This document shows, in pieces, positions 5,201-44,800 of a stretch of DNA of 64,000 bases. A program made the translations under genes and the position numbers. Each line of letters begins with the position of its first letter. Position 1 is the stretch's first letter. The notes beneath the pieces were generated by a model. The model was not told where the DNA came from, searched no databases, and saw nothing but the letters and a program-made list of their open reading frames with translations. Source of the stretch: Ophelia neglecta (Eukaryota). The DNA lies in assembly GCA_965285935.1 (NCBI GenBank), contig OZ260665.1, forward strand, positions 63,922,001 to 63,986,000, given 5' to 3'.

Positions 5201-8200
5201 TAATGAGGATATTTTTATACTTCAGTAATTTCTCTGTTCTCATGTTACACCTTGACCCTTTGATTTCATTGGAGTCCCCGATTTAATTAAAGTCCCGATA
5301 TATATTTCCAGGTATGTATCTGATCATGCCTATGACGGTTACAAGCTGTACTGTCAACACAAGTTGTTACAGTGTATGGAGATTGCCCCTGAGCTCTCCA
5401 GGTGCTATGCCCCCTGTCTATTGGAGTGGAAAGCTGCGGGCGAGAAAGCTTGTATGGCTCTGGAGGCTTACTGTGGAGATGGTAGGCGGCCAGTTAGTTT
5501 TAAAGAATGATTAGCCTGTTCGTGTTCCTTTTATACATTGCTTGGTAAAAAGAATTCCATGATTTTTAGTATTTTTGTTAATACATGCGTATCAAATGAC
5601 GGACAGGTACTTGGAGGATAGATTGTCTCTAGATCTATCAACCTTTAGTTCTGTTTGTTTCTTATTGTTATTACTTGCTTTAATGAAACTGAATATAAAT
5701 TAATTGGAATTAAGTTTTTGTCATATTTTGATATACAGGAGGCAAAAATTATGGCCATGTTGAATCATGGATGACAGCAGAGGAGTTTGCATCACAGCAC
5801 ATACAAAACAGGTAAACCAATTCCCTTGAATTTTTTTTATTATTAAATCATTTCTGTATTGTTTGAGAAGAAATTGGCCACAACATGAAGCATCACTATG
5901 AGTCAATGAGGAGACAGTCTTTGGTATCAGCTAGCTACCAGCATGGGAAAGCCATGTGTAAATGAGATTAAACCAGTGACGTAGAGCACCGAAACACTCA
6001 TTGAAAACAATGAAATATTATAGGCAAATGAAATTTACAAGCTCATACAAACAAACCATAAAATTTGTTTTTTTTCCTCTTAATTATTAAGAAATGAGAA
6101 ATTGCTGACTGAGGATATGCAACGTGTTAAAACTGAAAGCTTCAAAAATATAAGCTCTATGTGTCACTGTACAATTAGTGGTGTATGCATCAAGACGTTC
6201 ATATGGCTGTAGGCTTGTAGTTTGGAATATATACAATGCCATGGTGATGTTTATTAACTTACCAGTTGACAATACCAACAGGAACATAGAAGAAGGTCAC
6301 CATGGGTGGACTGTGGCTCTGAGAGATGAGAGTGACGTGTACGAGTGTGCAGGCCATGATTACCTCCTGGATATGATCAGCGAGATGGAGATCCCACCAT
6401 ACTTCCCATCATGCAAAGCCTACTTTCTGGTCAGCAGTGACCGCCCCAAAGAAAGCAAACGAAGGAAACTCTTCATTGACACGTGAGTATTCTCTCTCTT
6501 TTTCTCCAAATTGAATATTATAGGACTATGCATCTATTATATTTAACAAAGAGTGATGAAGAGAACAAAAACTATTGCTATAGTCTGAGATTCAAATTTG
6601 TCTGTTGCCTGTCAGTATTTCTCAATTTATTTAGTAGTAAACAAAAGGAACATGATTTATAATTTACAACAGACCTCACCATGCTGATAACCCCCGCAAA
6701 ATGGAACTACCAATAGAGGAGTTGACTAAACCCACCCCGGCCTCCCCCAGGCCTCCCCTGCAGCCCAGCTCCTTCTTTCAACATCCCAGTAGCAAGAACG
6801 GAGATGCGGATTACGTATCCAGGGAGGAATTGCTCTCAGGTAGCATCCTCAACAAAAGAGACCTCAGCAATAACCCTGACCTGTCTAAGAATAGCATACT
6901 GAACATCAGATATGTTAAGAGGCCTGCTCCTCCACACCCTCAGTCTACCATCTCCACACTGGAATCTGAGGGCCAGCCATCCCCAAGGCCTGACTCGTCT
7001 GCTCCTCCTCTAGCTGCCAACAGCAAGATGAACAAGAGGTATGTGGCACCAGGCGATATCAAAATTGACTTGCCTCACACTAGACTCAATAACCGGTACA
7101 CTATCGCACAGGATAAGTTTTTCCCCAATGGAGATCTTCCAAATGGAGATCACTTTCCAAACGGCGTTCAAAATGGCAATGTTGACTTGTCTGGAAATGG
7201 TCAGCCCAACTCGCGTTATGCAAAGAATCCTAATGTAAATCGATCTAGTGCACATTTGGAGCACTCGGCAAAGGATCAGATTCTCAGGAAGCATCGACAA
7301 CAACCAGTAGTTTCCTCAGGTCGGTCTGATGTTTCCGACTTAGATCGATGGGTAGATGACGTTTTTGACAGGGTGCTTGATGGCAATGTTGATGAGTTAA
7401 ATGAACAACGGACTCTGGAAAACAGGCTGAAAGGTGGTGGAGATAACCCCTTCCAGGTAGGTCACATTCTCTTATTATTATTATTTCAACAAGTATCATT
7501 ATTAAATTTTTTTTTAACAAGCCTCAAAATAAATGTGAAAAATTGAGAGACGGTGTAGTGTTAGTTAAAGTTATTGTGAACAAAAATGTATTGTTATGGT
7601 GAAAGCTGTCTTATATTTGTCTCCAGCAGCCTGTATATTCCACCATGATTAATACGGGCATGCCAGGGACCTCCACCTCCTTCCCTGTCACACAGCCACT
7701 GTACACCCAAACCACTAGTCTAGGAACAGGTAAGTTGGAAATTAATAATGATAATTAAACTGTAGGTTTATTTATGCGTGACTTAGTAATGCAATATTTA
7801 GGATTTACTTGTTTATAAGATAGTTATCTAATATTGCCAGTAATGCATGCACATGTTTTTAGGTGCTAAAATCAGCTGTTAGTGTCTTTATATTTGATGA
7901 TTTATTCATTTATGGGTGTATTTTCCCCTTTGGTGTGGGACTGACATGGGGTGATGTCAATCAGTCAGTAAGTATTGCCCAAGATCTGCCTTGGCTGGGT
8001 GCAGGGCTAGTGTGGGGTGAAGTCCACCAGTCAGTGAGAATCAAGGATCTCCCTTGGCTGTGTGGGGCGATGTCCACCAGTCAGCAAGGAGTCTAAAACT
8101 ACCTTGGCTGAGTATGGGATGATGTGGGGCAATGTCCACCAGTCAGCAAGGAGTGAGGAACTCCCTTGGCTGAGTGTGGGATGATGTGGGGTGATGTCCA

Positions 8201-14200: not shown

Positions 14201-17200
14201 AAAAATCATCCATTTCAGAGCCCACAACCACAGGCAGACAGTTCTGTGATTTTGAAAAAACAACTGGAGGAAAGGACCTTACAAAACAAAATTCTCCAGA
14301 TGGAGTTAGAATCCAAGCGGATAAAGCTGGAGATGGATTCTGTAGGACAGCAGTCTAAACCTCCACAGGCCCAGCAACCTGCAGCAAAGGGGGCGGCCCC
14401 ACAGCCAGCAGTCCTCAACTTCACCTTGCCAAAAAATGCCAATGTGGTAACCTCTCCTACCAAACCCCTATCACCACCTGTTGCACCCAAACCATCCGTC
14501 CCCAGCCAGTCTCCCCAGTACAAGATGTCGGCTGAGGGAGAAATTGATGAATCTGTACCAAGTGGTGTGAAAACTTTGGCCAAAGCGTTTGAGAAAAAAA
14601 TGCCATTCCTAACTGGCCAGACAAGACCACCCCCATCAACAAGACCACCACAGCCCATAAGACCAACCCCATCTGTTGTCGTCCCAGATCATGCCAGCAA
14701 CAAGGTTACATTCTCTGAGAGTGTACAGACCTTGCCTGAGGTTAGGGAAACAGGCACATCCCCCCCATCCCCTCCCCCTCCTGCCATCCCGGTGCCTTCA
14801 CCCCCTCCTCCTCCGACGATCAAGTCACAACCTAGTTCTAATGCAGTGTTATCACAGCCTGCCCCTCAGGCCCTGCCTAAGACTCCACCCCCAACCCTGC
14901 CTAAATCCCAAACTAGGTCACCAGTAGTGGTACCGCAGCTGGCTCCTCAGGCCCCACCCCAGTCACCATCACATGCCCCACCCCAGGCTCCACCCCCTCC
15001 CCCACATGAGGTCTCTACGCCACCCACAAAGCCTCCAAGTGCTCCTCCACCGCCTCCCATTCAACCATCAGCAATACATGAAGGTCCACCTGGGCCAATC
15101 CACTTGACTGACAAATCTGGCCGTGCCAGAGTTGTCAAAGTTGGGAAGATACAATGGCCACCACCACAGGAGGAATCCCATAAGGATGCACCTAAAGTTG
15201 GACGTCTGGAAATTTCAGAAAAGGTTTCTGATTCCATAAAACAGTCAAGAGTCAAGCGAACCCCATCTGATTTGAAGAGGCATTTCACCAAGGTATTGCA
15301 TCATCTATTTATAATACCCATATCAATTTCATCTAATATTTGTAGGCTATAAATGTAATTATTTCCGCGAAATGCAGATATTATGTTTTCAGTAGCGCCG
15401 CCGCCGCAGATTTTAGTCGTTAACGCGATAACTCAAAAACCATTTCGTACATCTTTTTCAAATTCAATACAGCCATAGACCTTATTGAGAGGAGGAACTG
15501 ATTAGATTCTGGTGAAAATCCAATAATTATTAATTAGTTAAAACAATTAATTAATTACGTCAGAAACGCATTTTCTGCAATAACACAAAAATATTTGATA
15601 CATCTTTTTCTAATTTGACACAGCCATAGACCTTATTGAGAGGAAGACCTGTATTTCTTCTGGTGAAATTCTGATAATTATTAATTAGTTAAAAAAATTA
15701 ATTAATTATGTCAAAAACACTTTTTCTATCAGATATTCCAAAGTATAGATGATATTGGCTTGAAGTTTTGTGTCATGATTCATGTAATAACTATATACAA
15801 TCTGTGTAATAAGTTAACTAGTTAACTTTATTAATGACCTGAAAAAAAATTAGTTTTGCATTATTATTGAGGTCATATGACACCTACTTTAAGAATGACC
15901 TGCATTATTATTGAGGTCAAATAGAACCTACTACAATCTGTGTAATAAGTTAACTAGTACTGTGTAATAAGTTAACTAGTCTAACTTTATTAATGACCTG
16001 AACAAAAATTAGTTAAGGTCGTTATCTTTTGTGCCAACTAAAAACTACCATATTCACTACCTCGCCTTATGCCATGTTCCCCATTCGATTATTGCACGCA
16101 TTCGCGGATATACCCCTTGCTGTCGCCCCCCCGACAGCGTTGGCCTAGTTTCTGTTTTGTTTTAAGACAATCGCAAGATCAAAATATGAATTCAGGCATA
16201 AAGCATAAGAATTATACTTTTTAGAAAGCTGATACAATCCGTCAAGAAGCTGGGTATGGTGAGTTGGACATGAAGACAAAGAGTAAATCCATTGAGGCCA
16301 AGTTGAAAAAAAGCTGGGGCCTTGACCCAGATGAATTAAGGGAGGAGCATAAACCAGAGCCTGTGAAGGCTCCTGAGCTGGTAAAGCCTGCCAAAGGTAA
16401 GCGAGACACACTGATGCCCCCGCCGCCTATGCCAAACACAAAGCCAAGTACCAGCGAGCTTTCCCCTTCACCGCCACCGCACAAGCCTGCCAAGGAGCTG
16501 CCAAAACCACCGAAAGGTAAGGGACCCTGAGCTTTTTTATAGGGAAGGTAAGACAAGTGTTCGAAGTCAACATTGCCTGACACACCATTTATCTATACAA
16601 TGAAGATATAGGTTTCTGGCTAAGAACATTAGTCTTGTATTCCCTTATGATGCAGTACAGACTCCAAGGCAGCTCAGAAGCTGTCCGTTACATAAGGCAT
16701 TCAGACCTACATGTACATGTATGTTACCTAGTGTAATTCCATTCTTTAAAGTTTTCTTTTTGTTTTTTAAGAAATGCCCATGTATCATACAGCAAACAAA
16801 TGCATGCAAAATTTCCTTTTAGTTAAGTTTTCACATAAATATAACCCGAAAGAGGACTGCTGTGCAAAGGATAAAAGTAATTCGATGCCTCCACATACAA
16901 CCAGTGATCACTGCACGTTATTAATTTTTGTCATAATAATTTGTGAGACTGCATAAGGAGAATGTGTAATATATATTCATACCTGTCCCTCTGTAATGAG
17001 GCATTTTAGCATTCTATGAATAATAATTAATGGATTAACATGTAACACTGAGCATGATATATTAGATTTTGATATTTAACTGCATGTTGAAAGCAAATTC
17101 TATTTATACAGTGTATGTACAACAAAACAGCCAAATATTATGAAGACAGCCACTCTTTGTAAATATAATGAGGCATTGAATTATCATTGGTATAGTAAAT

Positions 17201-20200
17201 ATAACTAAATATAATTTTTTTAAAGTATGACAAATAGATATAAACACAATGTTTAGGGCTATGTTTTTCATGAAGTGAGTACTGGGGTTAAACCATTACT
17301 TACTTTCATGTATTCCTTTATCATATGTGTAAAAACTTTGAACGAAAGCATTTGTACATGTTGTTTATGTTAAATTTTTTACATCCAAATCTGTCTCCTT
17401 ATTGCATTCGTTCCTATTAATAAGTAGTGTATTGTAGTGTACCCCCCCCCCCCCTCCCATTTCTACTTTTCCTAAGGTAGCTATTGCTTTTTATGCAGAG
17501 TTAGCGCCCCAGACTGTAGTGGACACCATACCAGACCTGAGGTCCCTGGAGAAGGTCCAGACTGTGTTGTATGCCCAGAGCACTGGGCCCTTCCTCACCT
17601 ACACCACAGTACCATGGACACTGGAAGTCCGCAAAGAGGTGCATGTTTGTAATGTTTATACTAGATTTAACAGGGGTTCCCAAAGATCTGTTCTGATGAA
17701 TTTCTGTTCTGATGCCGCCTTCAGCTGGCTGGCAAAATAACCTCATAGGAACTGAGCATATAAACTTCTTTGCTAGCTACCATCAAACCATCTTCTATAT
17801 AAACATATATGTTGTATACACCTTTGTACTGACCCAATGTACTGTATATGGTTCTTAAGGAGCCATAAAAGATGCTGCTGGATGTTCTTAGATATGCTAG
17901 GTGGCTGGTAAAAATGAAAACAGATATTTTCATATACCAAAGTTGTTTAAAAAATCTTCTACAAGTGTTACTTTGCAGATTTTACTTTTCTTCGTATTTT
18001 TGACCAAAGTTGACCTTGGCGGTTGTTGGGGGCCCCTGATTTCAGGGTACAGAATAATATATACGTAAGATGGAAATTCTTCCAGCAATTAAGACCTCAT
18101 TCTCTCTAGCTGCAGAGTGTAAATGTTGTGCTTAAGAAACAGAAATATCCCGAGCAATATTAAAACTGATTTTAATTATGTTTACAAATAGCTATGTACT
18201 GATCTAGTGTTGTTTTTATGCAGTTGTTCACTCCATCAGAGACATTGGAAAATCCCATGTTAGTAGACCTGGTGTTTGGTCAGATTGTGATGGACACCTT
18301 CTCTAATGCCTGTATCAGAATACAGAAAGTTGACAAGGTCAAGATGAGAGGAATGATGGGTAGGGATACACACAAGTCCATCTTCTATCAACTATTAGTT
18401 ATCTTAAATTCCATTCAAAGTCCTCCCCTACATCCCCACTCGTTCAAAAACATACAAGTAATTACACTTAACATGGAGTTAAGAAAAGTATAAATACCAA
18501 TTATTTAAGTTGACTATTCCCCATGAATTATATAAAATAAGAGGTACATTGATAAGTAAAGATAGTTCTCTTTTCAGAGAGCACTGGAGTAAATATGAAC
18601 ACCATACTAGATGACCATCCTGTGAAGTTGAAAAGAGACATCATAGACACTGCCTTGGAGTGGCCTTTTTACTTCAGCAGAATGTTTCCTGTCAATGTGA
18701 GTGGTGCTTATTTTCCTCAGACAAGCTTTTCTGCCTTTCCCTCTTCATGATAAGTTTAGTCTCAATATATTCTTGCCTCTAGGTTTTTGGGAGGATTTCT
18801 TTGTCTTATAATCTAATAAGCACTCCTTGAGCTCTCTTTTTTTATTTTTGATATTTATCAAGTGTAAGTTGCTTTTAGCTGTTCCATTTCTACAAGGACT
18901 GATAAATATTGCTTGGGTAACACCTTTCATTTAAAACCATAACTTGATATGAATTTAAGTTCCATCATGGAGTATTGGGTTTTCAGAAAGACTATAGATT
19001 TACATGATTGGTTGAAAATATAATGTCCTTGTAGGAATTAATTTCCTAGCCTTTGTCTACTTATATTTAAGTAGCTTTCAGTATTTGCACCAAATTCTTC
19101 TATATATCAGACTGATTAAGGTCAGCATTAAAGGGCTTATGTGTACTGCTAATTAGATATCATAAAAATGATCTCTGATAACTTGTTTATGATAGTTTTA
19201 TGGTAACACTACCTTACATGTTTGTGTATGTATGATACATAATTTTGCAAATGTACATTATCTTTATCCAACTAAAAGAAGAATCTCAATAAGGTAGTAT
19301 TTTCTTTTCTTTGGTCATGTATAGGAGTGTGTCAAGTGTGTTTTTTTCAGTGAATTTTTATCCAAGAGCCATATTTCAAGGATGACATTTCCAAAATGAA
19401 CTTTTTTGCCACCAATGTATATTTCATTCACACTGTTTATCTTATGATTATCCTTGCATGCCTACTGGGTTGAACGTTTTACTTATGAAATGTTGTTCAA
19501 CAAAGCTGTCACTATAAAAGTCTGTCTGTCTGTGGCTGCATACTTATGGTTATACCCATTTTAAACATTAAAATTATTTATTGTTTTTATAAATGGCATA
19601 GATTCAATTTCATCATTTGAGTAGTCTTTAAAATATCAAGTAAATGTACAACCAGCTATGTTTTCATTACTTGCAAGTTTATGTTTATAAATATAAAATT
19701 GTGATTGACTATTGCTGTAAATGCTTAGGGTGGACGAACTCATCCTAAAGTGCACATGGTTAGTGTAGGACATTCTGGTGTAAGGCTTCTGTCCCGAGAA
19801 AGAGATTTGGTTGAAGACAGTCTAAAGGTGCTTGAAACATTCAAGTAAGTTGAAACTAAGCTTTTACACAGGCCTTCTGGATCTGCCTTGGAAATCGTTA
19901 AGCAGGTCTCACTGCAATGACTTAGTAGGAATCTAGTAGGATTCACATCCCCAAAGTTTAAACTTTCCTATAAAAATGCGAAATACAGTGTTAAAAGTGC
20001 ATAGCCATTATAAAAATCAAGTCAATTCCATTTAGATTAAGTTGTATGGCAAAAACTTTCTTCTTTTGTATGATCTTCATATGTAAAACTGTTAGTAAAT
20101 TGATATCCTGCTATATACAATGTAATCTTTATTCTAAGAAAAAATGAAAATCCCAGATTTCTTCCTGTAGGTAAATATAATTACATGAAGTTTATGAAAA

Positions 20201-23200
20201 GTTTATGTCCTTGTCTTCAGATATGAAGAAATCAAAGATGTGAGTGTGCCAAGGCCTTTCACTGTACAGATTCACTCGGTAGATGAGAAATACACAATCC
20301 TCTACTCCTACAGGGTCAGTCTCAACTCATAGCATGTAAAATGAGATCAGACTAGTGGTTTTCATTAAACATCTACATGTTATTAAAGTGTTGTTTATTG
20401 TTCACCTTCCTTAAAAGTATTGTTATAGGTTTAAAGTAATATCTTAGATCATTGTCTTTTTTTCAGGCAGAGCAACTGAGGAGTTTGATTGAAGCCTTTT
20501 GCATTGAATGTGAAATGGTAAGTTATTACTGAAGTTAGAAATTATATATAAAAGATACATAACAAAGTTCAATGTTGGTTTATATTTCAATATTAGTGTA
20601 TGAATTTGTGTGTGAATTAATGTATAATATGATTGTAATGTCAATTAAAACCTATCACAGAAGAAATAAATCTGAAAAAAGTTGGATACTTGAGATATTC
20701 ACACATTAAGTGTGATTGCCTTAGTGAAAGTGGCATCTTTTTTCCCTTATTACACCCTGCCTGCCACATTGTTCAGGAAAAAAACACAACGGATGAGAAT
20801 TGTGTAGTGTTTCCTGCTTATTACATTCAAGTGTTTTTTACTTCTTGTGTGATACCTTTCAGAATGTAAGATACGTGAGAGCTATCAAAAGATACAACAC
20901 CCACGAGCCAACTCTCTTGAGTTTTGACAAGGGGGACATTATCAAACTCACCAACAAGAACATGACCATCGACAGAGGTGGGCAGGCCCAATTTATAATA
21001 TAATTATTATCATATGATATAAAAAAAGGAAATATATGGTTGGTTTATCTGGTAATAACCTTGAACAATCTGCTTTCAGCATGTTTTACTATGAAACATT
21101 ATATAAACACTGCACTGATTTATGATTGCAGAGAATAAATAAACTTATTGGTGTATTCATTGGGTCCTGCTGCTCTTGATTATTATTTATCTGATAGTTT
21201 ATTTTTGAGATGTGATATTTTTGTTTTGTTTCCAGGATGGCTGTATGGGTCAGTGCACGGTAGAACTGGACTTTTCCCAGAGGATTACATCAAACCTGTA
21301 CCCCTACATGAACTTACAGCCTTGCATTTACTGGTGAGATATAGAGTATTTGCTTGATAAAGATAGAATTGCATATCTATATTTTTTTCAGTATTATTGC
21401 AGTTTATTGCCATGGTGTGACATATTACTACATAAATATATTACTGCATCATAATAGTTTAGTGTGTATACATGTTAAATTTCCTGTACTCCATACTTCC
21501 TTGTATATAATTGTAAACATCTAAATGCTTGAAGTATTAAAAAAAGTCAAGAGAATGGAATTTTTACAAATAAGAAGGAAGTATGATAATTTCTAATGGA
21601 GTGTTTTCTTACTGCCATTATTATAGTCCAACAGCCGTGGTAATTTGATTGCTTAAGGATAATTTTAATGCATGAAGATTTTATATCTTTTAATAAGGCT
21701 AAAAAAACAGTTTTAACTCCATATAGTTACTGGGTGTAGATTATTAACTGTGCCAGGAAAATTTAGAGTTGTATATTAGCATCAGAAACATGTGTGGCAT
21801 GAAGTATCAGTAACACTGTCGTGTGTATTTGATTGGTTTGGCTCATTATTGATTGTTGGAAGTCAATCTATATTGCTTTAAAGTAATCTGGAATATGTTA
21901 AGAAAATCTGATTACAATAATCAGTAGTCTGATTACAGAAGTTATGTATAATCTTTTAATATAAACATTACTAGTACTTGCATGTTAATTCAGTTCAAGT
22001 TTGTTTGGAAATTCACTATTTTGCTGCCGAAATTACCAGATAATTGGTTTCACCAATAAAACTGTTTGGTATGTGTGCTTAATCTATTGTGATTACATGT
22101 GGAGGCATCTAATTCACTGTACAAATAACACAATGGGGAAAAATCAATTTGTGCAAACATACCAAGCAAGTTGTCTCATTGTTATATAGAACAGGTCCAG
22201 CGTGTTAAAGTCAACGACTTAAACATTATTTGTTCCCATAGCTATATTTTAATAAACAGGGATTTACATGTGGAGCAACTTTGGCCATACAACTTAATCT
22301 TAATGGAATTGACTTGATTACTAAGTCATGTGAATGAGAAAGTATCTACAGGCCTCAAGATAGTAAGTCATGGACACGAGATAGCATAGCGGGGCCACAA
22401 GATAGTAAGTAATGGGAATGAGATAGCATCTCAGGGCCAAGGGATAGTAAGTCATGGGAACAAGGTAGTATCTAGGGGCCACAAGATAGTAAGTCATGCG
22501 AATGAGATAGCATCCCAGGGCCAAGGGAAAGTAAGTCATGGGAACAAGGTAGTATCTAGGGGCCACAAGATAGTGAGTCGTGGGAATGAGATAGCATCTC
22601 GGGGCCACGAGATAGTAAGTTGTGGGGATGAGATCGGGCCACGAGATGGTAAGCCATGGAACATGTAGTATTTCGTTAAAATAAGATAGCATCTGAAGGC
22701 CACAAGACAGTAAGTTATGGGAATAAGATAGCATCTCAGGGCCACGAGATATTAAGTTGTGTGCAAGAGATATCAGGGAACGAGTTAAAAGAAAGAAATT
22801 CTGACTTCCCTTAGGGCTTAGGCCAGGGGATTATTTTAGGCCCAACCAATTAAAATCATCACAATACATGTATAACATTTCAAGTTCACAAGAATAGCAA
22901 GAATCATATTTTGACATGAAGCATTGCATGTTATTTGCATGGTTTACTGGCAATATAATGATACTGTAAACTTAAGCTGAATGAAAACAACATTATATGT
23001 TGTTTTGGTAATCTGAAAGAAAGTTAGTCTCCATTTGAATCTCTTTCTCATAAATGTTACATAGGAAATAAAATGTCAAGCATAGAGAACATTGTATATA
23101 ATAGATGCATCGCATACATAGCAGCATGTGCATGTACATGTATATTGAACCTTGCCATTTCTCACAATTGAGGTTCTAAATTAGTCATGTGTGGCCTTTT

Positions 23201-26200
23201 GCATGCATGAGTTGGCCGAGTTGGCTCACTTACCGTGCTGAAAAGGTATTTAGCATTAACCAGAGCCACTCCACACACTTGGAGTGCTTCTGATCTGGGT
23301 TCATCCCCTACTTAATAAACAGAGGTTTATATATTGTGCATGCATGGTGCCGACTGGCATACATATAATGTCAGTGATAGGCAGTCTGTTGGATATTGGC
23401 TGGCTCCACCTGAGTGAAAGCATGTATATAAGCAGTAGGTCCACAGGTTTATTTCACAGACGTGTTGGGTATTTTTTATAGGAAAAGGAATATCATTTCC
23501 ATATAGATACATCTTATAGAAAACGGCCACAGTGCTATGTGATTGGGGGGAGTTTTAAATTCAGGTCAGAATGGAATAGAATGAGACTATTATTTGTTCA
23601 CTTTGAACAAATAATTCTATTGAAGTGCCATATACCAACAAATATTTGTATGTTTGACATTGGTATTATTAGAAACGGGATGTTTAAGCTCTTTAGTGTC
23701 ACAAGGCTTGTCATGTCATTGTAGTGGCTTTTTGCAAAGACTACAATGATCTCTCCCAAAAGTCTGAAACTGTGTGGAAATCATGGTGAGAAAATAGTGC
23801 ATTCTTTGTATTAGGATTGAGAATTTTCACAAAGGCAGAGTAAAATGTCATCGTACATTTTGGGTAGAGGATATTTTTCTGGTGAAGATCTGACCCCAGT
23901 ACGAAGGAAGTATGGCTATGTTAAAGCTCCATCAACCTCTAGTCAGTGGACCAAGAGCAATGATACCCGTACAAAGGATAGCAAAGACAAACATATAAAA
24001 CATGGCCGAAGGCATTCAATCAGCAGTCTGAGAGAGCTGGACCTTGGCAGGGAAGGAGCCATATTATCCAAGTCCTATGATAATCTAGCTAATAAGCCTG
24101 CCAACCCCATTCCTAAGCCCTTCAAGGGATATTATAAAAAGTACAACAAAAGGGATCGCTATGGGAAGAACTACAAAATGGAGCCGAAAACAAAAACTCA
24201 GCTGGTGCCGAATGGCTATCATTTGGGACCCAGTGTTGAGCATATAAAACCCAGTAAGGGGAAGGCTCATACTATCCCACGTGAGCTGATGGAATTCTAT
24301 AAAGAAAACACTGTGTGGGAAATCAAACATAAACTAGACAGAGACAGGATATACAACGGGTACCCCCTAAACAACAACCACAATAACAACTACCACCTGC
24401 CCACCGGCAAGTCCCATTCCCTTGACCCTCACCTCTGGAGAACTAACTACAGATCTGATCTGCTGAGAACTAACTACAGATCTGATATTCTCTTTCAGAT
24501 GGACAAAACCAGAACTCCTGCAAGTACTGTAAGTCAATATTTAGAACTATTTACAGTTTTCACTATTGAATATTTGTGTGTATGTTGTACTGTACAAGCA
24601 TGTTTTAGCTGTACCCCAGATATTAAGTATTATAGTTAAGGTTCTGTGTTAATTTAATGATACATATATAAAGTACAGTTTGCTTGTCTTCTTCTACCTT
24701 TGCAATTAGTAAAATGTTTCAATTTATGTTCAATTCAATATGATGGCTTTAAAATCAATATGAAACAATTAAGTGATAATAAATTCAAAAGCTATTGATT
24801 TCTATCTTTTTGTGGGTTGATGAATGCAGAGGTCTGATTATTGATGAAAAGTACAAAAACTTCTATTTAAACATTTAGCATTAAATCAATGTCCAATAGA
24901 ATTACAATTCATCTGGAAATAACCAAAAACTCACGTGATTACAGTCTTATTCAATCATTATAATTGCGGTCAGACTGCTAAGGCAATAGAATATAAGGTG
25001 AATGGCCATGAGCTGACCAATGGGAGTCATGGCTATGATGGCGATGACGATGATGAGGATGAATATCATGATTCCGATAGGGTCGATCAATATGCTATTG
25101 TCAAAGCGCATAAGGTACAACTCCAAAGATACAAAGATCTTATACAATTTACTGACTTTGATTTAGTAAAGCTGCTAGCTTGGAAAATCTACTAATATAA
25201 CATATGAGGGCTGTGGGGATTTGTTGCTACAACTTTTTACCCATTTTTTATCGTTTTTTATTGATACTCATCCAGCTTCTGTTAATGGTGGAGGAAACAT
25301 AGTTTGATCACTGCTCACATAGATAACACCTTGTTTGGCTTCAATATGGACATCCTGGTCATTTTAAGTTTCACCTTTCATGTGACCTTTAAATAATTGG
25401 TGTCCCATAGCTAACAGCTTAAATTATATTATAAGTACCTATAATAATATTACTAACCATGTCTAGTGTGTGGCAGATACTGAAGATTTTGTTCTCAGTA
25501 TTTTATTCTCAATGGGGAAGGGGGAGGTGGGGGGGGGGGGGGGTTGAAGGGAAAAATATCTTTGTTTTGCACCCTACTTTCAGGGCTAGCCTTTGATAGT
25601 TGATCAATCCCTGTTCAACACTGGATCAGCCCTCCAAAAAGAAAAAAAAAACATTGCTGCCCAACCCTTCGTTTAGTGAAATTTTGGAAATATTTACAAA
25701 AGTCTTAACTAAGTTGAGATGTTTTCACTTTGTTCCTGTTTGACCACGAAATGATACAATGATAGGATGCATATTCAGATATTTTTTTTATTCAGCCGGT
25801 TTGAGAAAGGTGAATTTTTTGTTTGTTTCAGTTTAATCAGCTTCAGTGTTTCCCATTTTATTCATGTTTATGTAGAGTAAAATTATTAAAATGCATCTCA
25901 GTTTGTTTATGATATAAACAGTCTTGTGGGTGATTTGAAATCCCTTCATTTTGAAATTAATTTAATTAGACAAATATTTGAACAAATCTAACCTCCCTAC
26001 AGTAGATTTTAGACAATTACTTTTTTTTATTTAATCTTTTCACTTAACATGATACATTCACTGACTTTTACATTTATTTTTGGATTTGTGATAGTGTGTT
26101 TCAATTGCATGATAGAAAAAGGAGTTGTTTTCTTTAATATAGATATTATGTCATTTTTATATTGTACATATAATTTTCTTAATATATTACAATACTTTCA

Positions 26201-29200: not shown

Positions 29201-32200
29201 TTAACAAGAAGTCAGTATATTTATGGTATGGCAAATTTACAAAAAAATGTATAGTAATAATGTTTGTTGGATTGCACAGTCCCTGCGTTAATGATAACAT
29301 AACTTGGTACAATAAGGATACTATTAGATTTTGCTTTTTTTTCATGAGCAGGCCAGATTTATGAGGCACTTTAAAGGCATAATAGTGGGTTATTAAAAGG
29401 ACAATAAAGCTGTACACTTTAAAGGCAGCACAATTACAATTATACTCCAAAACCTAAAAATAGATACAAAATATTAACCTTTAAAAATTCTATAATAAGC
29501 TATTTTTGGGTTGCCAATGAAAGTTTCACTTTATCTGTATTGAATACCAAATCATTTTTTTTAGGATCCAATTCAGAACTCCTTGTTGAAATTTGAATCA
29601 CCTAAGATGAACAAACAAGCAGCAGAATGCTTTCTGTGTAAGTAAAGCATTATATACATTTAGTGATAATAAGATTGTTATTACAGACAATTTTCATGTT
29701 ATTAATTAAGGATTTGTTAACTGCATTCTCTGCCACCTTGTATACATGTATTAATGGTCACTTTGATATCTTTGCCCATGCAGCCATAATGCGATACATG
29801 GGAGATTACCCCTTGGACAAAGGTCAGAAGCCCATTGACAGTGTTTACTCCATACTGATGTCCTGCCACAACAACCCCGACCTGGCTGACGAGGTGTACT
29901 GCCAGCTCACCAAACAAACTACTAACAACAGGAGCACCAAACCGTAAGTTCTACTAAACTACAAACTATTAACACTCTGAGTAGACAAAACCAAAAGTAA
30001 GAAAAAACAGACAAGACATTTACTATGTAGTGCCCCAAACTGTTTCTAATGATAGAATGAAACATGAAAGCAACACTGACAGGAGGACTTGATTGCCAAA
30101 GTGTAACACAAATACAAGTTTGGATGGTACCTTTTATCTCAGTCCCCAGTGTTTGTTAGAGCAGCACCAAACAGTCTTCATGTCTTTAAAGAAATAAAAA
30201 TGAAACCAGTTGAATACAATTTTCTATTGGACGTCTCATCCAGAATCCTTGACAATTTGCTGTCTGACTGCCAAAAAGTATGAACTACCAGCAGTCGTAG
30301 CAACAGAGTAAAAGAAATGTCATGTTTGACTGGGCTTAGATAATACCTATAATATCCAAAGTGAATGGGTAGCTACAACTCTTCATAAGTAAAATTTAAT
30401 ATCCAAAGCTAAATTGGTAGCTTCAACTTGGCTTAGATAAAACCTAATTTCCAAATTGAATGGGTGGCTCAAAACTATCAGTCTGAGCATGACTTGCTTA
30501 GAATAAATTGTTTTAAATAATTTATACTATTACAATTGAAATAATGTTTTGGATTAAAGCCGTGTGCAGCATATGAAATAGTTCAGTTTTCCAACAAACA
30601 TAATGCTTGGTATTTACATATTAGTATAGGACTTGGAGCACTTGATTTTCCCTATTATGTTTTGTTCATTGCCTTTCCAGAGAGAGTGAAGTCCAGGGCT
30701 GGAGGCTCCTCTGTATCCTCAGCTCCTATTTTTCATCTTCCAAGGCCCTGCAGCCGTATCTCCTGAAATACCTAGAAACTGCTTACAACAGTGACAGACC
30801 TCACCATGGTAAAGTTCTATGTTTGCAGATTGGTTGTTTAGATAAATACCTTAACCTGCAACTAAGACCTCTAAATTCTAAGGAGTAGGTAAAATATGAT
30901 GAAAGTATCACACATTAATAAAGTTTATTAGACCAAGTCCTCAGCATGCACATGATGTCACCAAATAATGATATTTTATGCATTATACATTAAAACAAGT
31001 TCTGTCTAGGTACAAGATGGATCCTGAAATAGGAATTTTGGCCTGGGCATATCTTAATGCTGCAACAGCTTTTTGATGTACCAAGTCTTTAAAAATTTCA
31101 TGCAGGTGGTCTATGAATATCTGATTTTAGCATTTAATGACATGTTAATCATTCCTTTTTTTTCCAAAATTAATTGAACCATGGCTTCCCAGGCCTGAAT
31201 GGCTTCTTGTAGTCAGACGGCATGTACACAAATGTGTATCAAATTACAACTGACAAACCGGACTTAATAGATTGCACATATAATTGATATTTTCAGCTGC
31301 TGCCCAAACCAGTTTGATTAATTTACGACATACATTCAGATATGGTGGCCGAAAAAATGTGCCAAGCAGAATAGAGCTGGAGGCTCTTACCGTAAGTCTT
31401 CATTTTGTAAATTTGAATCAGTCCCAAGAGTCAGAGATCAACATATAATAACAGGGTACAGGAATTCTTTTTAAAATAAGGGCTCTTCCATTTGAAAAGG
31501 TGTGTGTGTGGGGGGTGGGGGTGGAACTGGCTTTTTTTTGCACCCCCCCCCCCACCAACAGATTTTTTTTTCTTTGGACCCCCCCGACCAAGGTAAAAGG
31601 TTCATTCGTGACCCCCCCCCCCATGTATAGTAATGAAATTTCAAAATATCCCCCCCTCCCCCCAAAGCAAAGAACTTATATTAAAGCATCTTCCAATTCA
31701 GGCTTTAAAATTGAATCTGTGGTCTGCTTTCACAATGCACCTGATCAGGCTGATGAGCTAACCGACTTGCTTCCTACCTCTATAAGTAATTTTATTTATT
31801 AATAGTGCCAGGTTTTGAAAAAACAAGTAAAAAATAAACACCATGGTATAGATGGGTATTAATGCCAATCCAAACAGAAATTAAAACAAAAGGTTGGGCT
31901 ATTTCAGCAGGTCAGGTGCTGCTAAGTTGAGTTTAATAGACAGTAACCTGGTAACTGACAGGCAAACCCTAAACCCAAACATAACCCTTATACATGCAAA
32001 ACAACTGATTTATCTTTAAAGAGCACCCAATACAGCAATATTCAGCAATGAACGTTTTCTCTAAGTTGGTCTGGCCGGTTTAGATACGTCCCTTTAATGT
32101 AATACCTGGTCCCGATCTCTAAATCGGCTCTCACAACATCGTCAGATCATCAGTCTATCAGTCTACCTATCTATAGCCAGTCAGTCAGCAGTCAGTCAGT

Positions 32201-35200
32201 CAGTCAGATCAATGTACTTGTGTACCACGCGCACTTGAATCTAGCCTAGACAGCGTGGTTCCAGTTACCCGACCAACACTAAAAAAATTCCCCGACCCTA
32301 TGGTTTTTACAGCTTTATTCAGAATAAAATGTTGGCCTGCGACCCCCGGTCCTGGCCTGACAAACGCATTTTTTTGTGTTCGGTTTCTTTCTTGTTCTGC
32401 TCTGCCAGAAATAAACTGGTCGTAAAGTTTTCTTCTTTCTCCCGCTATTGTGCCAAGAGCTACATGGCACTTACTTCATCCTGCATCCTCCCCGCACTGT
32501 CGGTATTTGTATGCGGGTACTCCCTGCACAAGCTGGCAGGGGTGTGTGCAAAGAGCTCAACAGCTGGTCGTCGGGAAGAGCAAGGTTCTTTAAATTTCAG
32601 CTCTCCCCCCACCCAACATATTAAATTTAACTATTCACCCCCCACTCTACAGATATTTTTTTGTGGTCCAGGGGTGTAGGAATAGAAAAACAAAATGCTT
32701 CCGTTCCACCCCCCACCCCCACCCCCCGCCCTGATCTTTTCAAATGGATGAGCCCTAATGACATTGTTAAAAATTTAATGAAGAAAAAACTTGTACATGT
32801 TTTCAAGATCTGTGTGATTGTGTTTCAGAGAGGTCGTAACACTAAGAGACAGATGTGTATACTACCTGGGGGTACTCCCATGATGCTCAACATGAGAAGC
32901 AGCAGTGTGAGTATAAACAGTAACCTACAACTGAAGACTACGGCCTTAATGGAAAGAGGTCATCTGATTTTATAAGGATGAAGTCAAGTCAAATTAATTA
33001 AAGAAGAATGGCTGTACAAAATTCCTGTTGCTAAGTGGGACAGATTACAGTATGGCACAGGCTAAATATTCTGTTGTGTAAATAAAAGACAGGTTTTTTT
33101 TTAGTGCTCCAGAAAAACATGTCTACAAAAAGACTATGAAGGGTATTTGATTTGATCTGGTTTGTTATACAGGTTGTTCAAGATGCCATAGAACAAGTGT
33201 GCAGCAAGCTCGGTGTCCAGTCGGCGTCTGAGATGGAAGAGTTCACTATTTTCTATGTGATTGAAACAGGTTGGTTGTGTTTATTCATCTTATTAGGTAT
33301 ATATTTATTTGTTCAGTGGCTTTGATTTCCAAAAGAAAAAAACACCTTTATATTAATATGGGCTTAGCACATTTTTTTATGAATTCATAAATGTGCATTT
33401 GTGACATTCTGGTTAGTATTAAGGTCGATAGGTCTAACCAGATATTTGTCCCTTCATTGTGTATATAATTATTGTCTATTGTCTTATTTGCAGAGAACCG
33501 CTATTGCCCACTACGTAAAGAGGAGTATGTGTTTGACATTACAACTGAGCTGACCAATCAGAAGAAGAACTACTACCTCCTGTTTCAGAGAACCAGCTGG
33601 GTGTTCCCACTTCACCTGAACAGAGATGACCGTTATGTCGATGTCATGTTCAACCAGGTCAGTCTGACATTCTCCACAATGTCTTTGAAAAAAATGTCAG
33701 GATAAAAGGGAAAAACACAGGTTTTAAAAAACACATCGAAACCATAAGGCAGAAAGCACCGGATGTGAACATGTCAAACTATAAGGCAAGTAACACTGGT
33801 TGTGAAAATGTCAAAAACCAAATGACTGAAAACACCGGCTGTGAACTAGTCAAATCAAAAGGAAGAAAGTTTTGGGTTTGAACTTGTCAAAACAAAAAGG
33901 CGGAAAACACTGGTTGAGAACTTGCAAAAGGCGAACAACACTGGGCTTGAACATGTAAAACAAAAATTCAGGAAATGCTGGATTTGAACATGTCAAAACA
34001 AAAAGGCATAACATGGAAGGCAACACTTCCAAGCAAAAAAGGCAGAGTGGATTATACCATGACAAAATTCAAGGCAAATCACAAAAAACACTAATGTGAA
34101 CATGTCAAACAAAAAGCCAAAACATGAGATCAACACAAAATGGCAAAGCACAGGATGCTATTATGACAAAAATAAAACAGTATACATTAAGATAACAAAA
34201 CTAAAAGGCAACACACTGTGTTAACACTTCTAAAATAAAAGGCAAAAAAAACACTGGGTTAACACTTCCAAAATAAAAAGCAGACATGTTTGCAACCCTT
34301 TTTAATTGATGGGGCGTGCATTTCTAAACACCTTGTTTAATATGAAATGAATTTAGGTACATCAATGCCATTTGATAAAATGTGTTGAAATGAAAGCATG
34401 TATGTGTATGACATTTCCGGTTTGTATTCCAGTGTATACCAGACTACTTGGATGGTTACCTGCTGGCAGTTGTATCAAACACACTGCCAGATCACATGAA
34501 GGTAACAATAGAAGTTCTATACTACTAAGACTGATAACCTGTCATAAAAGCACAGATATATCAGAATGCGCTAAGGACACAATTGTCAAGCATTTTTCTT
34601 TTAATTCTATTTAATCAGTTACTAACTATGAAACTCATTATTATTTTGTTGTATAACCTATTTGTTTTGCCTCAGGATGAGATAGCCTATCTAGCAGCAC
34701 TCCAGATTAGATCTTCAGAAAAGCCAGGTGTCATTCAAAAACAGTAGGTTTTAACATATAACTGTTGATAAGAAAATTGTATTGATAAACATTACAAATA
34801 TGCATTACTGAAAAAGAACGCTGTGGTTTATGTGTATCAAAGGCCTGAACAGAGGGTCCATCAGTGTTACTAATTTCCAGTAGAAATATTTAGCCTTGGA
34901 AGAAAAACTGAAGATAAAAATGTATGTTGAAATTAAGACAATTCAAACTGGATGTTAACTGCTTTTCAGAAAAGACGTCCAGTTCTTTATCCCCAGTAAT
35001 GTACAGAACTTGTCTGATATGAAGCCACAGCAGTGGAACAATAAAATCCACCAGTTACTAACAGAAATGCCCCACATGAAACCCACAGAATGCCAAAAAA
35101 AATTCCTTGGTAAGTATTAAGAGTGTTAGGTGTATATCATCAGCTACAATGGTCCTAAAAAATATGTTTAAACTGTAACCACATATTATTATTTCTTCCA

Positions 35201-41860: not shown

Positions 41861-44800
41861 TTATTTTTTCACTATTTGAATCACATCATCATGCGCCATC
41901 ACATGACTGAGTCCAACTCGCTGGGGGTTGAATTTAACACTTTGACCCTGAAAGAAATGACAATTTATCAGCAAAAAATTACCTTTTGCATAAGTTAATA
42001 GACAAGATAGGCGTCTAATAAATCTGCCAAATTACACTAAATATGCACTTGTTAAGAAAAAAAGTTCAACAGTACTTACCCACACTAAGGCATACTTAAA
42101 TTGTGCCACCAAGGTTCTGTGAACTGTGTGGCACTGAAAAAAATACAAAAAAAATGTCTAAATATTCATTGCAATGGCAATGGCATGGCAATGTTTTACA
42201 AGTCAATGTGGTATCAATATATCAACTTTGCTCTGTGTCACAAAAGCAACATGTGCCCAATGAGTGACAGGTATTATGAAGGGCGAATACTTATAAATAC
42301 TCAAATTACTGTTTCAGAATTTGATATTCTTTATTTAACTCAAAGATAGATATCTGCTGATTTAATAGATATGTACCTCTTTGGAGGAAAGAGTATTCCA
42401 TCAGTAATATTCAGTATCACTGAATGAGTTACAGCATTTTTCTAGACTTTACTGTACTTGTGTCACACAGCAGGTCTACAAACGTATTTTACCCATCAAC
42501 TATTTAAACGGAAGTAGCTTGAAAAATACTTACAACATGTTCAACTGTACAGCCTTTCCGTAGAATCAAACCATTTTCCAAATCTGGCCTCTCTGTATTA
42601 AATTTAAAAAACAGTGATGAAACGTTAAAAGTGCTATCCAATAGGTCAGTTATGTAAATACTGCATATCATAGAAACAAAGAAATGGATCAAGCACAGCT
42701 GCAGATATCAAAGCTGGGGAAGTGAGACCAGACTGCCTGTGAATGTCAGACATGGTCCCCCATCCCCTTCACTCATCCAACTTGGTTGTATTTTATCTAA
42801 CACTTGATAGACAAGCTTACCTCCTCGCTTCTTGGTGTAAACATTCACCAATGCTAACATTTCCCACATCACTTCTAGTAAGTAATCCAGGTTAAGCTTC
42901 ATGTTACAACTGGAGAAAAAACATTCAAAGCAAATGAGATCATATCTGTGACCAACTCTCCATGTTTTTGCATTATGTGTTCATAATCTCCCCTTTTAGC
43001 CTTTGGAAAATTGAGAGGTTTCTTTTGTTGGCTTATTACCATGTGTCTCTTTAGTAAAACTTTCATGACATTAACTCTAAGGCAGAAAGGTTAGGATATC
43101 TAGTGCAATGAGACAAAAAGAATACACTCTAACCCTATTTTGTTAATGAGTACTGTAGCTAATATAATAGGTAGAGTGGACTTACCTTACTACTACTGTG
43201 CTGTCTTCCCTTGCCAGGCGATCCACCTCCTCGATAGATATCTGATCTATTTTGTTATAGACCTAAAAGTTCAAACCAGTCATAACTGGAGCTGATTCAC
43301 CCCCATATATTTAAAAACATTGTTACATCTGCTATACTATCAATGCAATAATATTATACTAGTCTGGTCAATGATGGACAAGATGGCAGGCAGGTTGGAC
43401 TAGTATGTAAACACACATTACTACACTCTTCCTCCTAAATTCTACATTAAGTGTGTCAAATACCTAATAGATCCAGAATTATGAGAATATCAGTAAGAAA
43501 GGGGTGAAACATTGAATAGATACTAGAAATAGTCTTATAATTGTACTTACATATAAACAAGGCATATGTACACGATTTCCAACAACAACATCAATAAATT
43601 CATCTGCAGTGCTGTCTTCTCTAAATAAAACTTCAGCATTGAAAATTTCTGTCAATCAGTTAAGGAAATAGCAAGGAGCAGGGTGTTAAAAATACAGCTC
43701 AAAGTTTTAGATACAAAAAAATTAATATTTGAGTTATTGTAACAAAAAATATATTTGCTTTTGAGAAGGATACTGTATTCATGGAGGATCATCTGGACAA
43801 GTTTCTCATTCAATCTGGTAAGATTCACAGTGGAATTAAATGACAAACCTCCTCCCTTCTTAATCTGTTTGAAAAAGTGTAATACATTAATTCCATCAGT
43901 AAAAATAATCTTATCTTAAACTTATCTTAGCCATGGAGTTTTGAAATGATAGACATGATAAAAAAGCACTCCTACCACTGTTTGATCATAAATAAATACT
44001 TACCTTAAAGTATATATTTGGTCTTGCTTTGTTGAGTCGAATGCCAACACTTTCCAATTCCTTTTCTAAAAGCATTCTACAGAAATCAAATTTTAAATTG
44101 TTAATATATATCAGACTGAAAACAATGTATCAAGTCAAGATACCAACAGTATAAGAGTATTCATTGGCATAATATGAAATAATTCAATGAATAACCCTTT
44201 TACATTTCCAGCTATTTTTTCATATGTATGGTGCATATGACACATTAATGTTTGCAATTCGTCCATGTGTTTTCTTCTTTCCAATTCCTTTGTTTCATAA
44301 AGCAGATACTTTGTTGTATTACCAACCTTTGCTGAACGCCCTTTGTGGCATCTAACATCATGATGACCATGTCGGCCGTTCTGGCCACAGCTATCACCTG
44401 TCGACCTCTTCCCTTTCCCTGTGCAGCACCTTCAATGATTCCCGGTAAATCTAACAACTGGACATTGGCTCCTTTGTACTGAAATGAATAAAACAATGTC
44501 AACTTGAGAAGCTTATACCACACTGATTATACCAGTTCTTTTAATTCTTGAGGTTTGTCAAATAAACAAATGGAATTTCTAAAAAACACATGCTCCTACT
44601 AACGTCTGAGCAGAGACCAGTTTATTATCAGATATGAACGCATCAACATTTCGTGACTTGATTTTTTCATTCTCGCTGTTAATACCGCCTGACTTATTTA
44701 CCTCAATGACCCCCGGGATACAGGTCAGGGTTGTGAACTCATAGCCTGCTGATTCACTGTGAGTGGACGTCAGTGTGTTTAGCAATGTGGACTGAAGTTA

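What the first reader, a model, noticed from the sequence alone, without database searches (positions are those of the whole stretch)
23380..24534. Internal promoter plus novel 228-aa first exon: a predicted stand-alone MyTH4-FERM protein nested in myosin XV
Seen: ATTGG (23395), TATATAAGCA (23425) and an Inr-like TTTCACA ~30 nt later. These are followed by an in-frame stop (23818), ATG 23845, and a 684-nt Lys/Arg/Tyr/His-rich ORF of no family I recognise. A perfect GTAAGT donor places it in phase with the second MyTH4-FERM module. The predicted product is ~833 aa (228 novel + 605 tail). With the 1692 exon, which shares the TATAAGCA core, the locus may produce a nested series: full motor, headless full tail, and MyTH4-FERM2 only. 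These could act as motor-independent membrane/microtubule adaptors or dominant-negative regulators. Alternative reading: a cassette exon entered through the weak phase-0 CAG at 23836-23838. Several upstream ATGs lie in the putative 5'UTR.
Basis: partly seen in the sequence, partly recalled or inferred. Interest (0 to 1): 0.8.

Follow-up and report, generated by a model that had tools for sequence, protein, structure and literature searches.

The report
Conserved extra exon inside myosin XV
A 228-codon reading frame in an intron of an invertebrate myosin XV gene is a real, conserved protein-coding exon. It may start a short motor-less MyTH4-FERM protein, but the proposed promoter is chance-level and no RNA data exist to settle how the exon is used.

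Summary
ORF 23845-24528 is a genuine coding exon. One orthologue exists, on an ENA metagenome contig (L001). It sits at the same place, between the SH3 exons and the second MyTH4-FERM module. Codon positions 1/2/3 are 61/64/37% identical. Similarity starts at the ATG (MSSY vs MLSY) and stops at a GTAAGT donor in both species. No other relative was found among 1.84 billion proteins, and there is no Pfam or PDB match.

Whether it is a first exon or a cassette exon stays open, because there are no RNA runs.

For a start at ATG 23845:
- The ATG is conserved, with A at -3 in both species.
- The in-frame acceptors are weak and not positionally conserved, unlike 21 of 24 other exons.
- The only positionally conserved AG, at ATG-12/-11, is out of frame with the SH3 exon.

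Against it:
- The CCAAT/TATA/Inr words occur at chance frequency and are not conserved.
- Eight uATGs follow the proposed start site.
- There is no CpG-rich island.
- In-frame AGs do exist in both species.

A unique conserved 20-mer about 206 nt upstream points to regulation of some kind.

My odds: alternative first coding exon about 0.5, in-frame cassette about 0.35.

The parts
23845..24528 (+). Coding part of the exon. It encodes 228 aa, basic (pI ~10) and mostly disordered. It has a conserved RRHS motif and two conserved helical motifs (aa ~146-170 and 195-210).
   Evidence: Orthologue L001:5645-6295 is 46% identical. Codon-position identity is 0.61/0.64/0.37. The frame is open in both species. 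AF2 gives mean pLDDT 44 with two helices. pI is 9.97 and 10.02.
24529..24534 (+). Splice donor GTAAGT, phase 0.
   Evidence: The same hexamer sits at the same aligned place in L001 (6296-6301). Protein similarity ends exactly here in both species.
23818..23820 (+). In-frame stop TGA, 9 codons before the ATG.
   Evidence: L001 has an in-frame TAA 19 codons before its ATG.
23836..23838 (+). CAG: the only acceptor that would join the SH3-2 exon (phase 0) in frame, reading ..LHLL|SKMSSY...
   Evidence: PWM score is -2.6, below 38 of 40 conserved acceptors of this gene pair. It is not positionally conserved: the aligned L001 triplet is GAT.
23833..23834 (+). The only positionally conserved AG before the exon, at ATG-12/-11 in both species. 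It is out of frame with the SH3-2 exon.
   Evidence: Joining SH3-2 here gives a TAA within 2-3 codons in both species. PWM scores are weak (-2.5 and -0.8).
23639..23658 (+). Conserved non-coding 20-mer CAAATATTTGTATGTTTGAC, about 206 nt before the ATG. It is the core of a looser conserved block at about 23615-23700.
   Evidence: 18/20 identical to L001:5434-5453, which lies 211 nt before that ATG. 0 of 400 shuffles reach it. It is the best collinear block of all intron flanks compared. It is unique in the 762-Mb genome.
23201..23224 (+). Second, weaker collinear conserved block (GCATGAGTTGGC core).
   Evidence: blastn gives 20/24 identical to L001:5057-5080, E 0.06 in the intron-to-intron search. 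It was not tested further.
23395..23458 (+).
   Evidence: Present but at chance frequency. No aligned counterpart in L001. Local CpG o/e is 0.24-0.31, against a window median of 0.22 and 0.6-0.94 at the intergenic island at 45-46.7 kb.
24439..24492 (+). In-frame 27-nt tandem duplication (RTNYRSDLL / RTNYRSDIL), absent from L001.
24974..25114 (+). Next exon, 47 codons, phase 0-0, acidic. It can be joined either to 24528 or directly to 21333.
   Evidence: The L001 counterpart is 6787-7095, also phase 0-0 and also beginning ACTG.
20863..20977 (+). SH3 exon 1 of the myosin XV tail.
   Evidence: Pfam SH3_2 22.3 bits, cut-off 21.8. Conserved in L001.
21236..21333 (+). SH3 exon 2, ending in phase 0 before GTGAGA.
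   Evidence: The L001 counterpart ends at 3328, phase 0.
29771..31424 (+). Exons of the second MyTH4 domain, downstream target of the splice chain.
   Evidence: Pfam MyTH4 37.3 and 35.6 bits (cut-off 27) on two exons, 17.1 bits on a third.

Best explanation
Positions 23845-24528 are a genuine, lineage-restricted protein-coding exon. It lies in the intron between the SH3 exons and the second MyTH4-FERM module of a class XV myosin gene. Most likely it is the first coding exon of an alternative, motor-less transcript. In that reading, translation starts at the conserved ATG 23845, the exon is spliced 24528->24974, and the product runs on into the MyTH4-FERM2 exons. The product would be about 830 aa: a basic, disordered head of 228 aa carrying an RRxS site and two conserved helices, followed by MyTH4-FERM2. 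The full-length myosin would skip the exon by joining 21333->24974, which is in frame in both species. Shown: the exon codes, and its donor, phase and ATG are conserved. Inferred: that the ATG is used as a start, and that a transcript begins inside this intron. Where that transcript would begin is unknown. The conserved block about 200 nt upstream and the conserved AG 12 nt upstream are the places to test.
For: Coding:
- The orthologue sits at the same position between the SH3 and MyTH4 exons.
- Codon positions 1/2/3 are 61/64/37% identical and synonymous sites are saturated.
- All indels are in frame.
- Within-species variants are 3 synonymous to 1 non-synonymous, with no indel in the exon.
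- Exon GC is 0.44, against 0.36 and 0.27 in the flanks.

Start at the ATG:
- Similarity begins at the ATG (MSSY vs MLSY) and ends at GTAAGT.
- A stands at -3 in both species: AAAATG and ACCATG.
- In-frame stops lie 9 and 19 codons upstream.
- The in-frame acceptors (window CAG, L001 GAG) sit at different aligned places. They score below 38-39 of 40 conserved acceptors of this gene pair. By contrast, 21 of 24 other exons keep a positionally conserved AG.
- The one positionally conserved AG is out of frame with SH3-2.
- Skipping the exon keeps the frame in both species and leaves a linker of ordinary length.

Precedent: headless Myo10 starts in an intron from alternative start sites (PMC5725431). 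MYO15A-3 uses an intronic first exon with its own start site and coding sequence (10.1101/2025.02.19.639121).
Against: No transcript evidence of any kind exists. No RNA run holds the exon, and the three runs that hold it are genomic. An in-frame AG exists between the upstream stop and the ATG in both species, so a cassette reading is possible. The promoter words are at chance frequency. uATGs upstream of the ATG are about as frequent as chance: 8 in 390 nt in the window and, by my reading, 4 in the last 200 nt of L001. There is no local CpG enrichment, whereas the inferred intergenic promoter island at 45-46.7 kb has it. Only two species could be compared, so the conserved Met rests on one pair. 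Internal exons are far more common a priori than coding first exons this deep in a gene.
Confidence: 0.5

Rival explanations
1. An in-frame cassette or constitutive exon of the full-length myosin XV. It would be entered at CAG 23836-38 (L001: GAG 5621-23) from the SH3-2 exon. It would lengthen the SH3-to-MyTH4-2 linker by 230 aa. The conserved Met would then be an ordinary internal residue.
For: The phases fit on both sides in both species. This gene has other large low-complexity tail exons (ORFs at 6701-7546 and 14246-15352). Weak acceptors and a conserved upstream intronic block are, from general knowledge, typical of regulated alternative exons. There is no promoter signal. Internal exons are the commoner kind.
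Against: The in-frame acceptors are not at the same aligned place, and the L001 one is a GAG scoring at the median of decoy AGs. Similarity starts at a shared ATG with A at -3. My rough estimate of the chance of an aligned Met pair in the first ten codons of a poorly conserved region is below 0.1. The residues between acceptor and Met differ in number and kind: SK versus ITPRDNT.
Confidence: 0.35
2. The exon is included in the long transcript through the positionally conserved AG at 23833-34. This stops the myosin reading frame at once, giving a myosin XV without MyTH4-FERM2 or an NMD target. The 228-codon frame would be read only from other transcripts.
For: That AG is the only positionally conserved one. 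It gives TAA after 2 codons in the window and 1 codon in L001.
Against: The acceptor is weak in both species. My rough estimate of the chance of a shared AG at some offset in so short a stretch is about 0.1. This reading does not explain purifying selection on the downstream frame unless the first-exon reading also holds.
Confidence: 0.05
3. An independent small gene nested in the intron and not spliced to the myosin exons, or a chance ORF or pseudo-exon.
For: The ORF runs on past the donor to 24639 (264 aa). No family was recognised.
Against: Similarity to L001 ends exactly at the conserved GTAAGT, and the read-through tails are unrelated. The donor phase matches the next exon in both species. 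The coding signature and the shuffle test exclude chance.
Confidence: 0.05

Closest known systems
Headless Myo10 (mouse), made from alternative transcription start sites in intron 19 (PMC5725431)
   Same: It is a MyTH4-FERM myosin gene that also makes a motor-less protein from an internal start. The product is thought to act as a scaffold or natural dominant negative. A leader exon spliced onto downstream exons is one of the ways the present exon could be entered.
   Different: The headless-specific exon of Myo10 is pure 5'UTR, and translation starts at an internal Met of the shared sequence. Here the exon would add 228 new residues. The product would keep only the last MyTH4-FERM, not the whole tail. 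Myo10 headless is proven by RNA and protein; this one is not.
MYO15A-3 (mouse/human), an intronic first exon with its own start site encoding a 6-kDa N-terminal extension (10.1101/2025.02.19.639121)
   Same: Same gene family (class XV). It is a previously unannotated intronic exon that supplies both the start site and new N-terminal coding sequence.
   Different: MYO15A-3 starts upstream of the motor and is a working motor. The exon here lies after the SH3 domain, so its product would lack the motor, the first MyTH4 region and SH3. There is no sequence similarity.
Stand-alone MyTH4-FERM proteins such as the PLEKHH/MAX-1 group (from my own knowledge, not tested here)
   Same: They have a MyTH4-FERM cassette without a motor, used as an adaptor.
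   Different: Those are separate genes with PH domains. The present product would be nested in a myosin gene and carries a disordered basic head with no known domain.
Regulated cassette exons with conserved intronic flanks and weak splice sites (general knowledge)
   Same: The exon is symmetrical (phase 0-0), has a weak acceptor, and has a conserved block in the upstream intron.
   Different: The exon is unusually long (690 nt). The acceptor position is not conserved, no conserved block lies downstream, and a conserved ATG stands at the start of the similarity.

Membership tests
Class XV myosin tail (MyTH4 .. SH3 - MyTH4 - FERM) | SH3 domain encoded directly upstream of the exon | tested here: met
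   SH3_2 scores 22.3 bits (cut-off 21.8) on 20800-21003. SH3_9 and SH3_2 hit the second SH3 exon below their cut-offs. Both exons are conserved in L001.
Class XV myosin tail (MyTH4 .. SH3 - MyTH4 - FERM) | MyTH4 domain downstream on the same strand and in order | tested here: met
   MyTH4 scores 37.3 and 35.6 bits (cut-off 27) on exons 29771-29944 and 30679-30825.
Class XV myosin tail (MyTH4 .. SH3 - MyTH4 - FERM) | FERM domain after the second MyTH4 | tested here: inconclusive
   Only weak single-exon hits were found: FERM_M 14.9 bits and FERM_f0 13.6 bits.
Class XV myosin tail (MyTH4 .. SH3 - MyTH4 - FERM) | Class-XV-specific domain (Pfam MYO15, PF26570) | tested here: met
   This is a precomputed hit on the L001 product at 1122-1340. 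That stretch aligns to window 18221-18364. I did not scan the window exon itself.
Class XV myosin tail (MyTH4 .. SH3 - MyTH4 - FERM) | Myosin motor domain in the same gene | not tested
   The motor lies outside the part of the window I studied.
Alternative first coding exon behind an internal promoter (headless-Myo10 / MYO15A-3 kind) | Transcript 5' ends inside the intron | not testable with these tools
   No RNA run holds the exon. The three holders are genomic DNA.
Alternative first coding exon behind an internal promoter (headless-Myo10 / MYO15A-3 kind) | Conserved start codon in a good context with an upstream in-frame stop | tested here: met
   The ATGs are aligned, with A at -3 in both species. 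Stops lie 9 and 19 codons upstream.
Alternative first coding exon behind an internal promoter (headless-Myo10 / MYO15A-3 kind) | Promoter signal above chance (core motifs or a CpG-rich island) | tested here: not met
   Motif counts equal the shuffled expectation. CpG o/e is 0.24-0.31, near the window median of 0.22. A conserved 20-mer at -206 is compatible with a promoter but not specific to one.
Alternative first coding exon behind an internal promoter (headless-Myo10 / MYO15A-3 kind) | Leader free of upstream ATGs | tested here: not met
   Eight uATGs lie between 23455 and 23845. This would be met only if the leader is shorter than 62 nt, or if the exon is entered by splicing at AG 23833-34.
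In-frame cassette exon | Symmetrical phases, with skipping and inclusion both in frame | tested here: met
In-frame cassette exon | Usable in-frame acceptor conserved between species | tested here: not met
   In-frame AGs exist in both species but at different aligned places. They score -2.6 and -6.4, against a median of 4.3 for 40 conserved acceptors.
In-frame cassette exon | Reads across 21333->23839 | not testable with these tools
   No RNA data.

The most novel reading that the evidence does not exclude
A group of invertebrates makes a dedicated MyTH4-FERM2-only protein from inside the myosin XV gene. It would start at a conserved ATG in a private 228-codon exon. That exon adds a basic, disordered head with a PKA-type RRxS site and two conserved helices. 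The protein would be a motor-independent adaptor, or a competitor for the cargo that binds the last MyTH4-FERM of the motor. It would be truncated further than any known headless myosin.
Probability: 0.45. Interest if true: 0.6.

Novelty: new variant of a known kind. Interest (0 to 1): 0.42.

Why it matters
The last MyTH4-FERM of myosin XV is the cargo-binding end of the motor. In mammals it delivers the stereocilia elongation complex. A natural protein made only of that module plus a regulated, disordered head would be a built-in competitor or free adaptor. It would extend the headless-Myo10 idea to class XV. Even under the cassette reading, the exon is a conserved insert with no recognised family. 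It carries an RRxS site at a place where the canonical tail has only a short linker. The case also shows that the promoter words used to call it are uninformative in a genome of 37% G+C.

Tried and rejected
- **RNA evidence:** the one run search found only three runs of one sample. Laying them showed even cover of introns, so they are genomic. They were useful only for variants.
- **More orthologues:** none beyond L001 was found. This covers the word search, full HMMER over 1.84 billion representatives, a metagenome locus scan, and degenerate patterns for HKLDRDRIYN in metagenome and genome contigs. The two weak HMMER hits are unrelated YNDLTNKP repeat proteins.
- **Family and fold:** Pfam, PDB sequence and Atlas searches were blank. 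The AF2 model has pLDDT 44, too poor for a fold search.
- **Hidden exon between SH3-2 and this exon that would fix the phase of the conserved AG:** no conserved coding piece was found in a sensitive intron-to-intron comparison.
- **Coding leader at the ATGAGTTGG block (23201-23224):** rejected. By my reading, the open frames and the donor phases differ between the two species.
- **Leader exon ending at the GT conserved 5 nt after the 20-mer:** considered and set aside. Both donors are poor (GTATTA, GTTGTT), read.
- **Intron minisatellite 22322-22772 as coding:** rejected. The + strand has stops.
- **Rfam on 21300-25200:** nothing.
- **Joined model:** Exons were searched one by one by reference. 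Only junction frames of up to 17 codons were translated in scripts.

Full report
**Observation.**
- ATTGG at 23395.
- TATATAAGCA at 23425.
- TTTCACA at 23452.
- In-frame TGA at 23818.
- ATG at 23845.
- 228 open codons to 24528.
- GTAAGT at 24529.
- CAG at 23836-38.

The next exon runs 24974-25114, with its donor at 25115. The upstream SH3-2 exon ends at 21333 in phase 0, and both 23839 and 24974 begin in phase 0. The open frame is not chance: it spans 272 stop-free codons, against at most 141 in 500 shuffles of the same intron. The promoter words are chance. TATAWAAG occurs 9 times in the window against 10.3 expected. TATAAGCA occurs 4 times against 4.4 expected.

**What the gene is.** The + strand carries the tail of a class XV myosin.
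- SH3 exons lie at 20863-20977 and 21236-21333.
- MyTH4 exons lie at 29771-31424, above Pfam's cut-off on two exons.
- Weak FERM hits follow further on.
- The last coding exon ends near 36806.

The exon in question therefore lies in the linker between SH3 and the second MyTH4-FERM. I searched exons one by one and did not build or search a joined model.

**Is the ORF a real exon? Yes.** The word search found one relative, P0001. It is encoded on a 19-kb ENA metagenome contig, L001. The same ORF lies there between a MYO15-domain exon, the SH3 exons and a MyTH4 exon. About 25 exons are collinear with the window. The evidence for coding:
- The two ORFs are 46% identical over their whole length.
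- Identity by codon position is 0.61/0.64/0.37 overall and 0.76/0.82/0.45 in the C-terminal third. Synonymous sites are saturated.
- All indels are in frame, including a 27-nt tandem duplication private to the window (24439-24492).
- Similarity starts at the ATG (MSSY vs MLSY). It stops exactly at a GTAAGT donor in both species, and the read-through tails are unrelated.
- Three genomic runs of the same species show 4 variants in the exon, 3 synonymous and 1 N83Y, and no indel.
- Exon G+C is 0.44, against 0.36 and 0.27 in the flanks.

The exon is single-copy in the 762-Mb genome.

**What it encodes.** No family was recognised:
- Pfam gave no hit.
- PDB sequences gave no hit.
- The Atlas gave one row at 0.79, which its own notes rate as a lead only.
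- Full HMMER over 1.84 billion representatives found only P0001 plus two unrelated repeat proteins.

The product is basic (pI 10 in both species) and mostly disordered. AF2 gives mean pLDDT 44 with two helices, at 146-170 and 195-210. These are the best conserved stretches: LMEFYK..TVWEI.HKLDRDRIYN and GKSHSLDPHLWRTN. An RRHS motif, a PKA-type consensus from general knowledge, is conserved near residue 55.

No RNA run holds the exon, and the three holders cover the introns evenly. Earlier follow-ups on this genome also found no RNA data. What follows is comparative evidence from two species only.

*For a start at the ATG:*
- The two ATGs align, and each is the first ATG after an in-frame stop, 9 and 19 codons upstream. 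Each has A at -3: AAAATG and ACCATG.
- In 21 of 24 other exons of this gene pair, an AG sits at the same aligned offset in both species. For this exon the in-frame acceptors do not. The window has CAG 6 nt before the ATG, and L001 has GAG 21 nt before it.
- I built a PWM from 40 conserved acceptors of the two loci, with a leave-one-out median of 4.3. On it these two sites score -2.6 and -6.4, below 38 and 39 of the 40 and inside the decoy range.
- The only positionally conserved AG lies at ATG-12/-11 (window 23833-34, L001 5633-34). Joined to the phase-0 SH3-2 exon, it gives TAA after 2 codons in the window and 1 codon in L001. It could serve only a non-coding leader or a truncating form.
- Joining SH3-2 directly to the next exon is in frame in both species, and both next exons begin ACTG. 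The full-length protein therefore does not need this exon, and the remaining linker has an ordinary length.

*Against a start at the ATG:*
- An in-frame AG does exist in both species. My rough estimate of the chance of that is about 0.2.
- By my reading, L001 has 4 uATGs in its last 200 nt. This is about the random density, so the stretch shows no selection as a long 5'UTR.
- CpG o/e upstream of the exon is 0.24-0.31, near the window median of 0.22. The intergenic region at 45-46.7 kb, which I take for the promoter region of the flanking genes, reaches 0.6-0.94.
- The upstream DNA does not align as a whole.

**A conserved non-coding element.** The 20-mer CAAATATTTGTATGTTTGAC lies at 23639-23658. 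It is 18/20 identical to L001:5434-5453 and sits at almost the same distance from the ATG, 206 against 211 nt.
- None of 400 shuffles reached its score.
- It is the best collinear block among all intron flanks of the two loci, scoring 30 against at most 24.
- It is unique in the genome.
- Looser similarity extends over about 23615-23700.

It shows that something beside the exon is under selection. A promoter-proximal site and an intronic splicing regulator would both look like this, so it does not decide the question.

**Weighing.** Internal exons are much commoner than coding first exons deep in a gene. The aligned Met in start context and the failure of the acceptor test roughly cancel that prior. 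My odds:
- Alternative first coding exon, with an unknown start site or a spliced leader: about 0.5.
- In-frame cassette exon: about 0.35.
- Truncating inclusion through the conserved AG: about 0.05.
- Nested independent gene or artefact: about 0.05.
- The specific CCAAT/TATA/Inr promoter of the finding: about 0.1.

**Comparison with what is known.** Headless Myo10 is made from alternative start sites in intron 19. Its 5'UTR-only exon is spliced to the downstream exons, and the protein is thought to act as a scaffold or natural dominant negative (PMC5725431). MYO15A-3 uses an unannotated intronic first exon with its own start site and a 6-kDa coding extension, but it keeps the motor (10.1101/2025.02.19.639121). 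The present case would combine the two ideas and truncate further, to the last MyTH4-FERM only. It would be a new variant of a known kind, and it is unproven.

**Verdict.** Interest is moderate.

Noticed in passing
window 15251-16250 and 32001-32500: These are local CpG-rich spots (o/e 0.77-1.11 and 0.76) inside a strongly CpG-depleted gene body with a median of 0.22. They could mark unmethylated internal regulatory DNA or inserted elements.
   Followed up: no
window 45001-46750: A CpG-rich island (o/e 0.6-0.94) lies between minus-strand ORFs with a GTPase-like sequence (44245-45229, read by eye as DRG-like) and a plus-strand ORF starting at 47072. It is probably a shared bidirectional promoter. 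I used it only as a yardstick.
   Followed up: partly
window 22322-22772; L001 3580-4357: Both species carry a tandem repeat in the intron between SH3-2 and the exon. The window has a 42-nt period. The L001 stretch reads as a tandem repeat, and its + strand is open in all three frames for about 220-250 codons. I did not test whether the two arrays are related.
   Followed up: no
L001 11127-12571 versus window 30796-30812: In L001, a 17-mer identical to the 3' end of the window's MyTH4 exon recurs about every 42 nt over 1.4 kb of the following intron. A minus-strand ORF of 511 aa was called over it. It looks like a minisatellite seeded from the exon end.
   Followed up: no
window 22716-22776: One of the three genomic runs carries an allele in which 59 nt are replaced by 18 other letters. 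This is a structural variant inside the minisatellite intron.
   Followed up: no
It is one of four copies in the window, against 4.4 expected by chance.
   Followed up: partly
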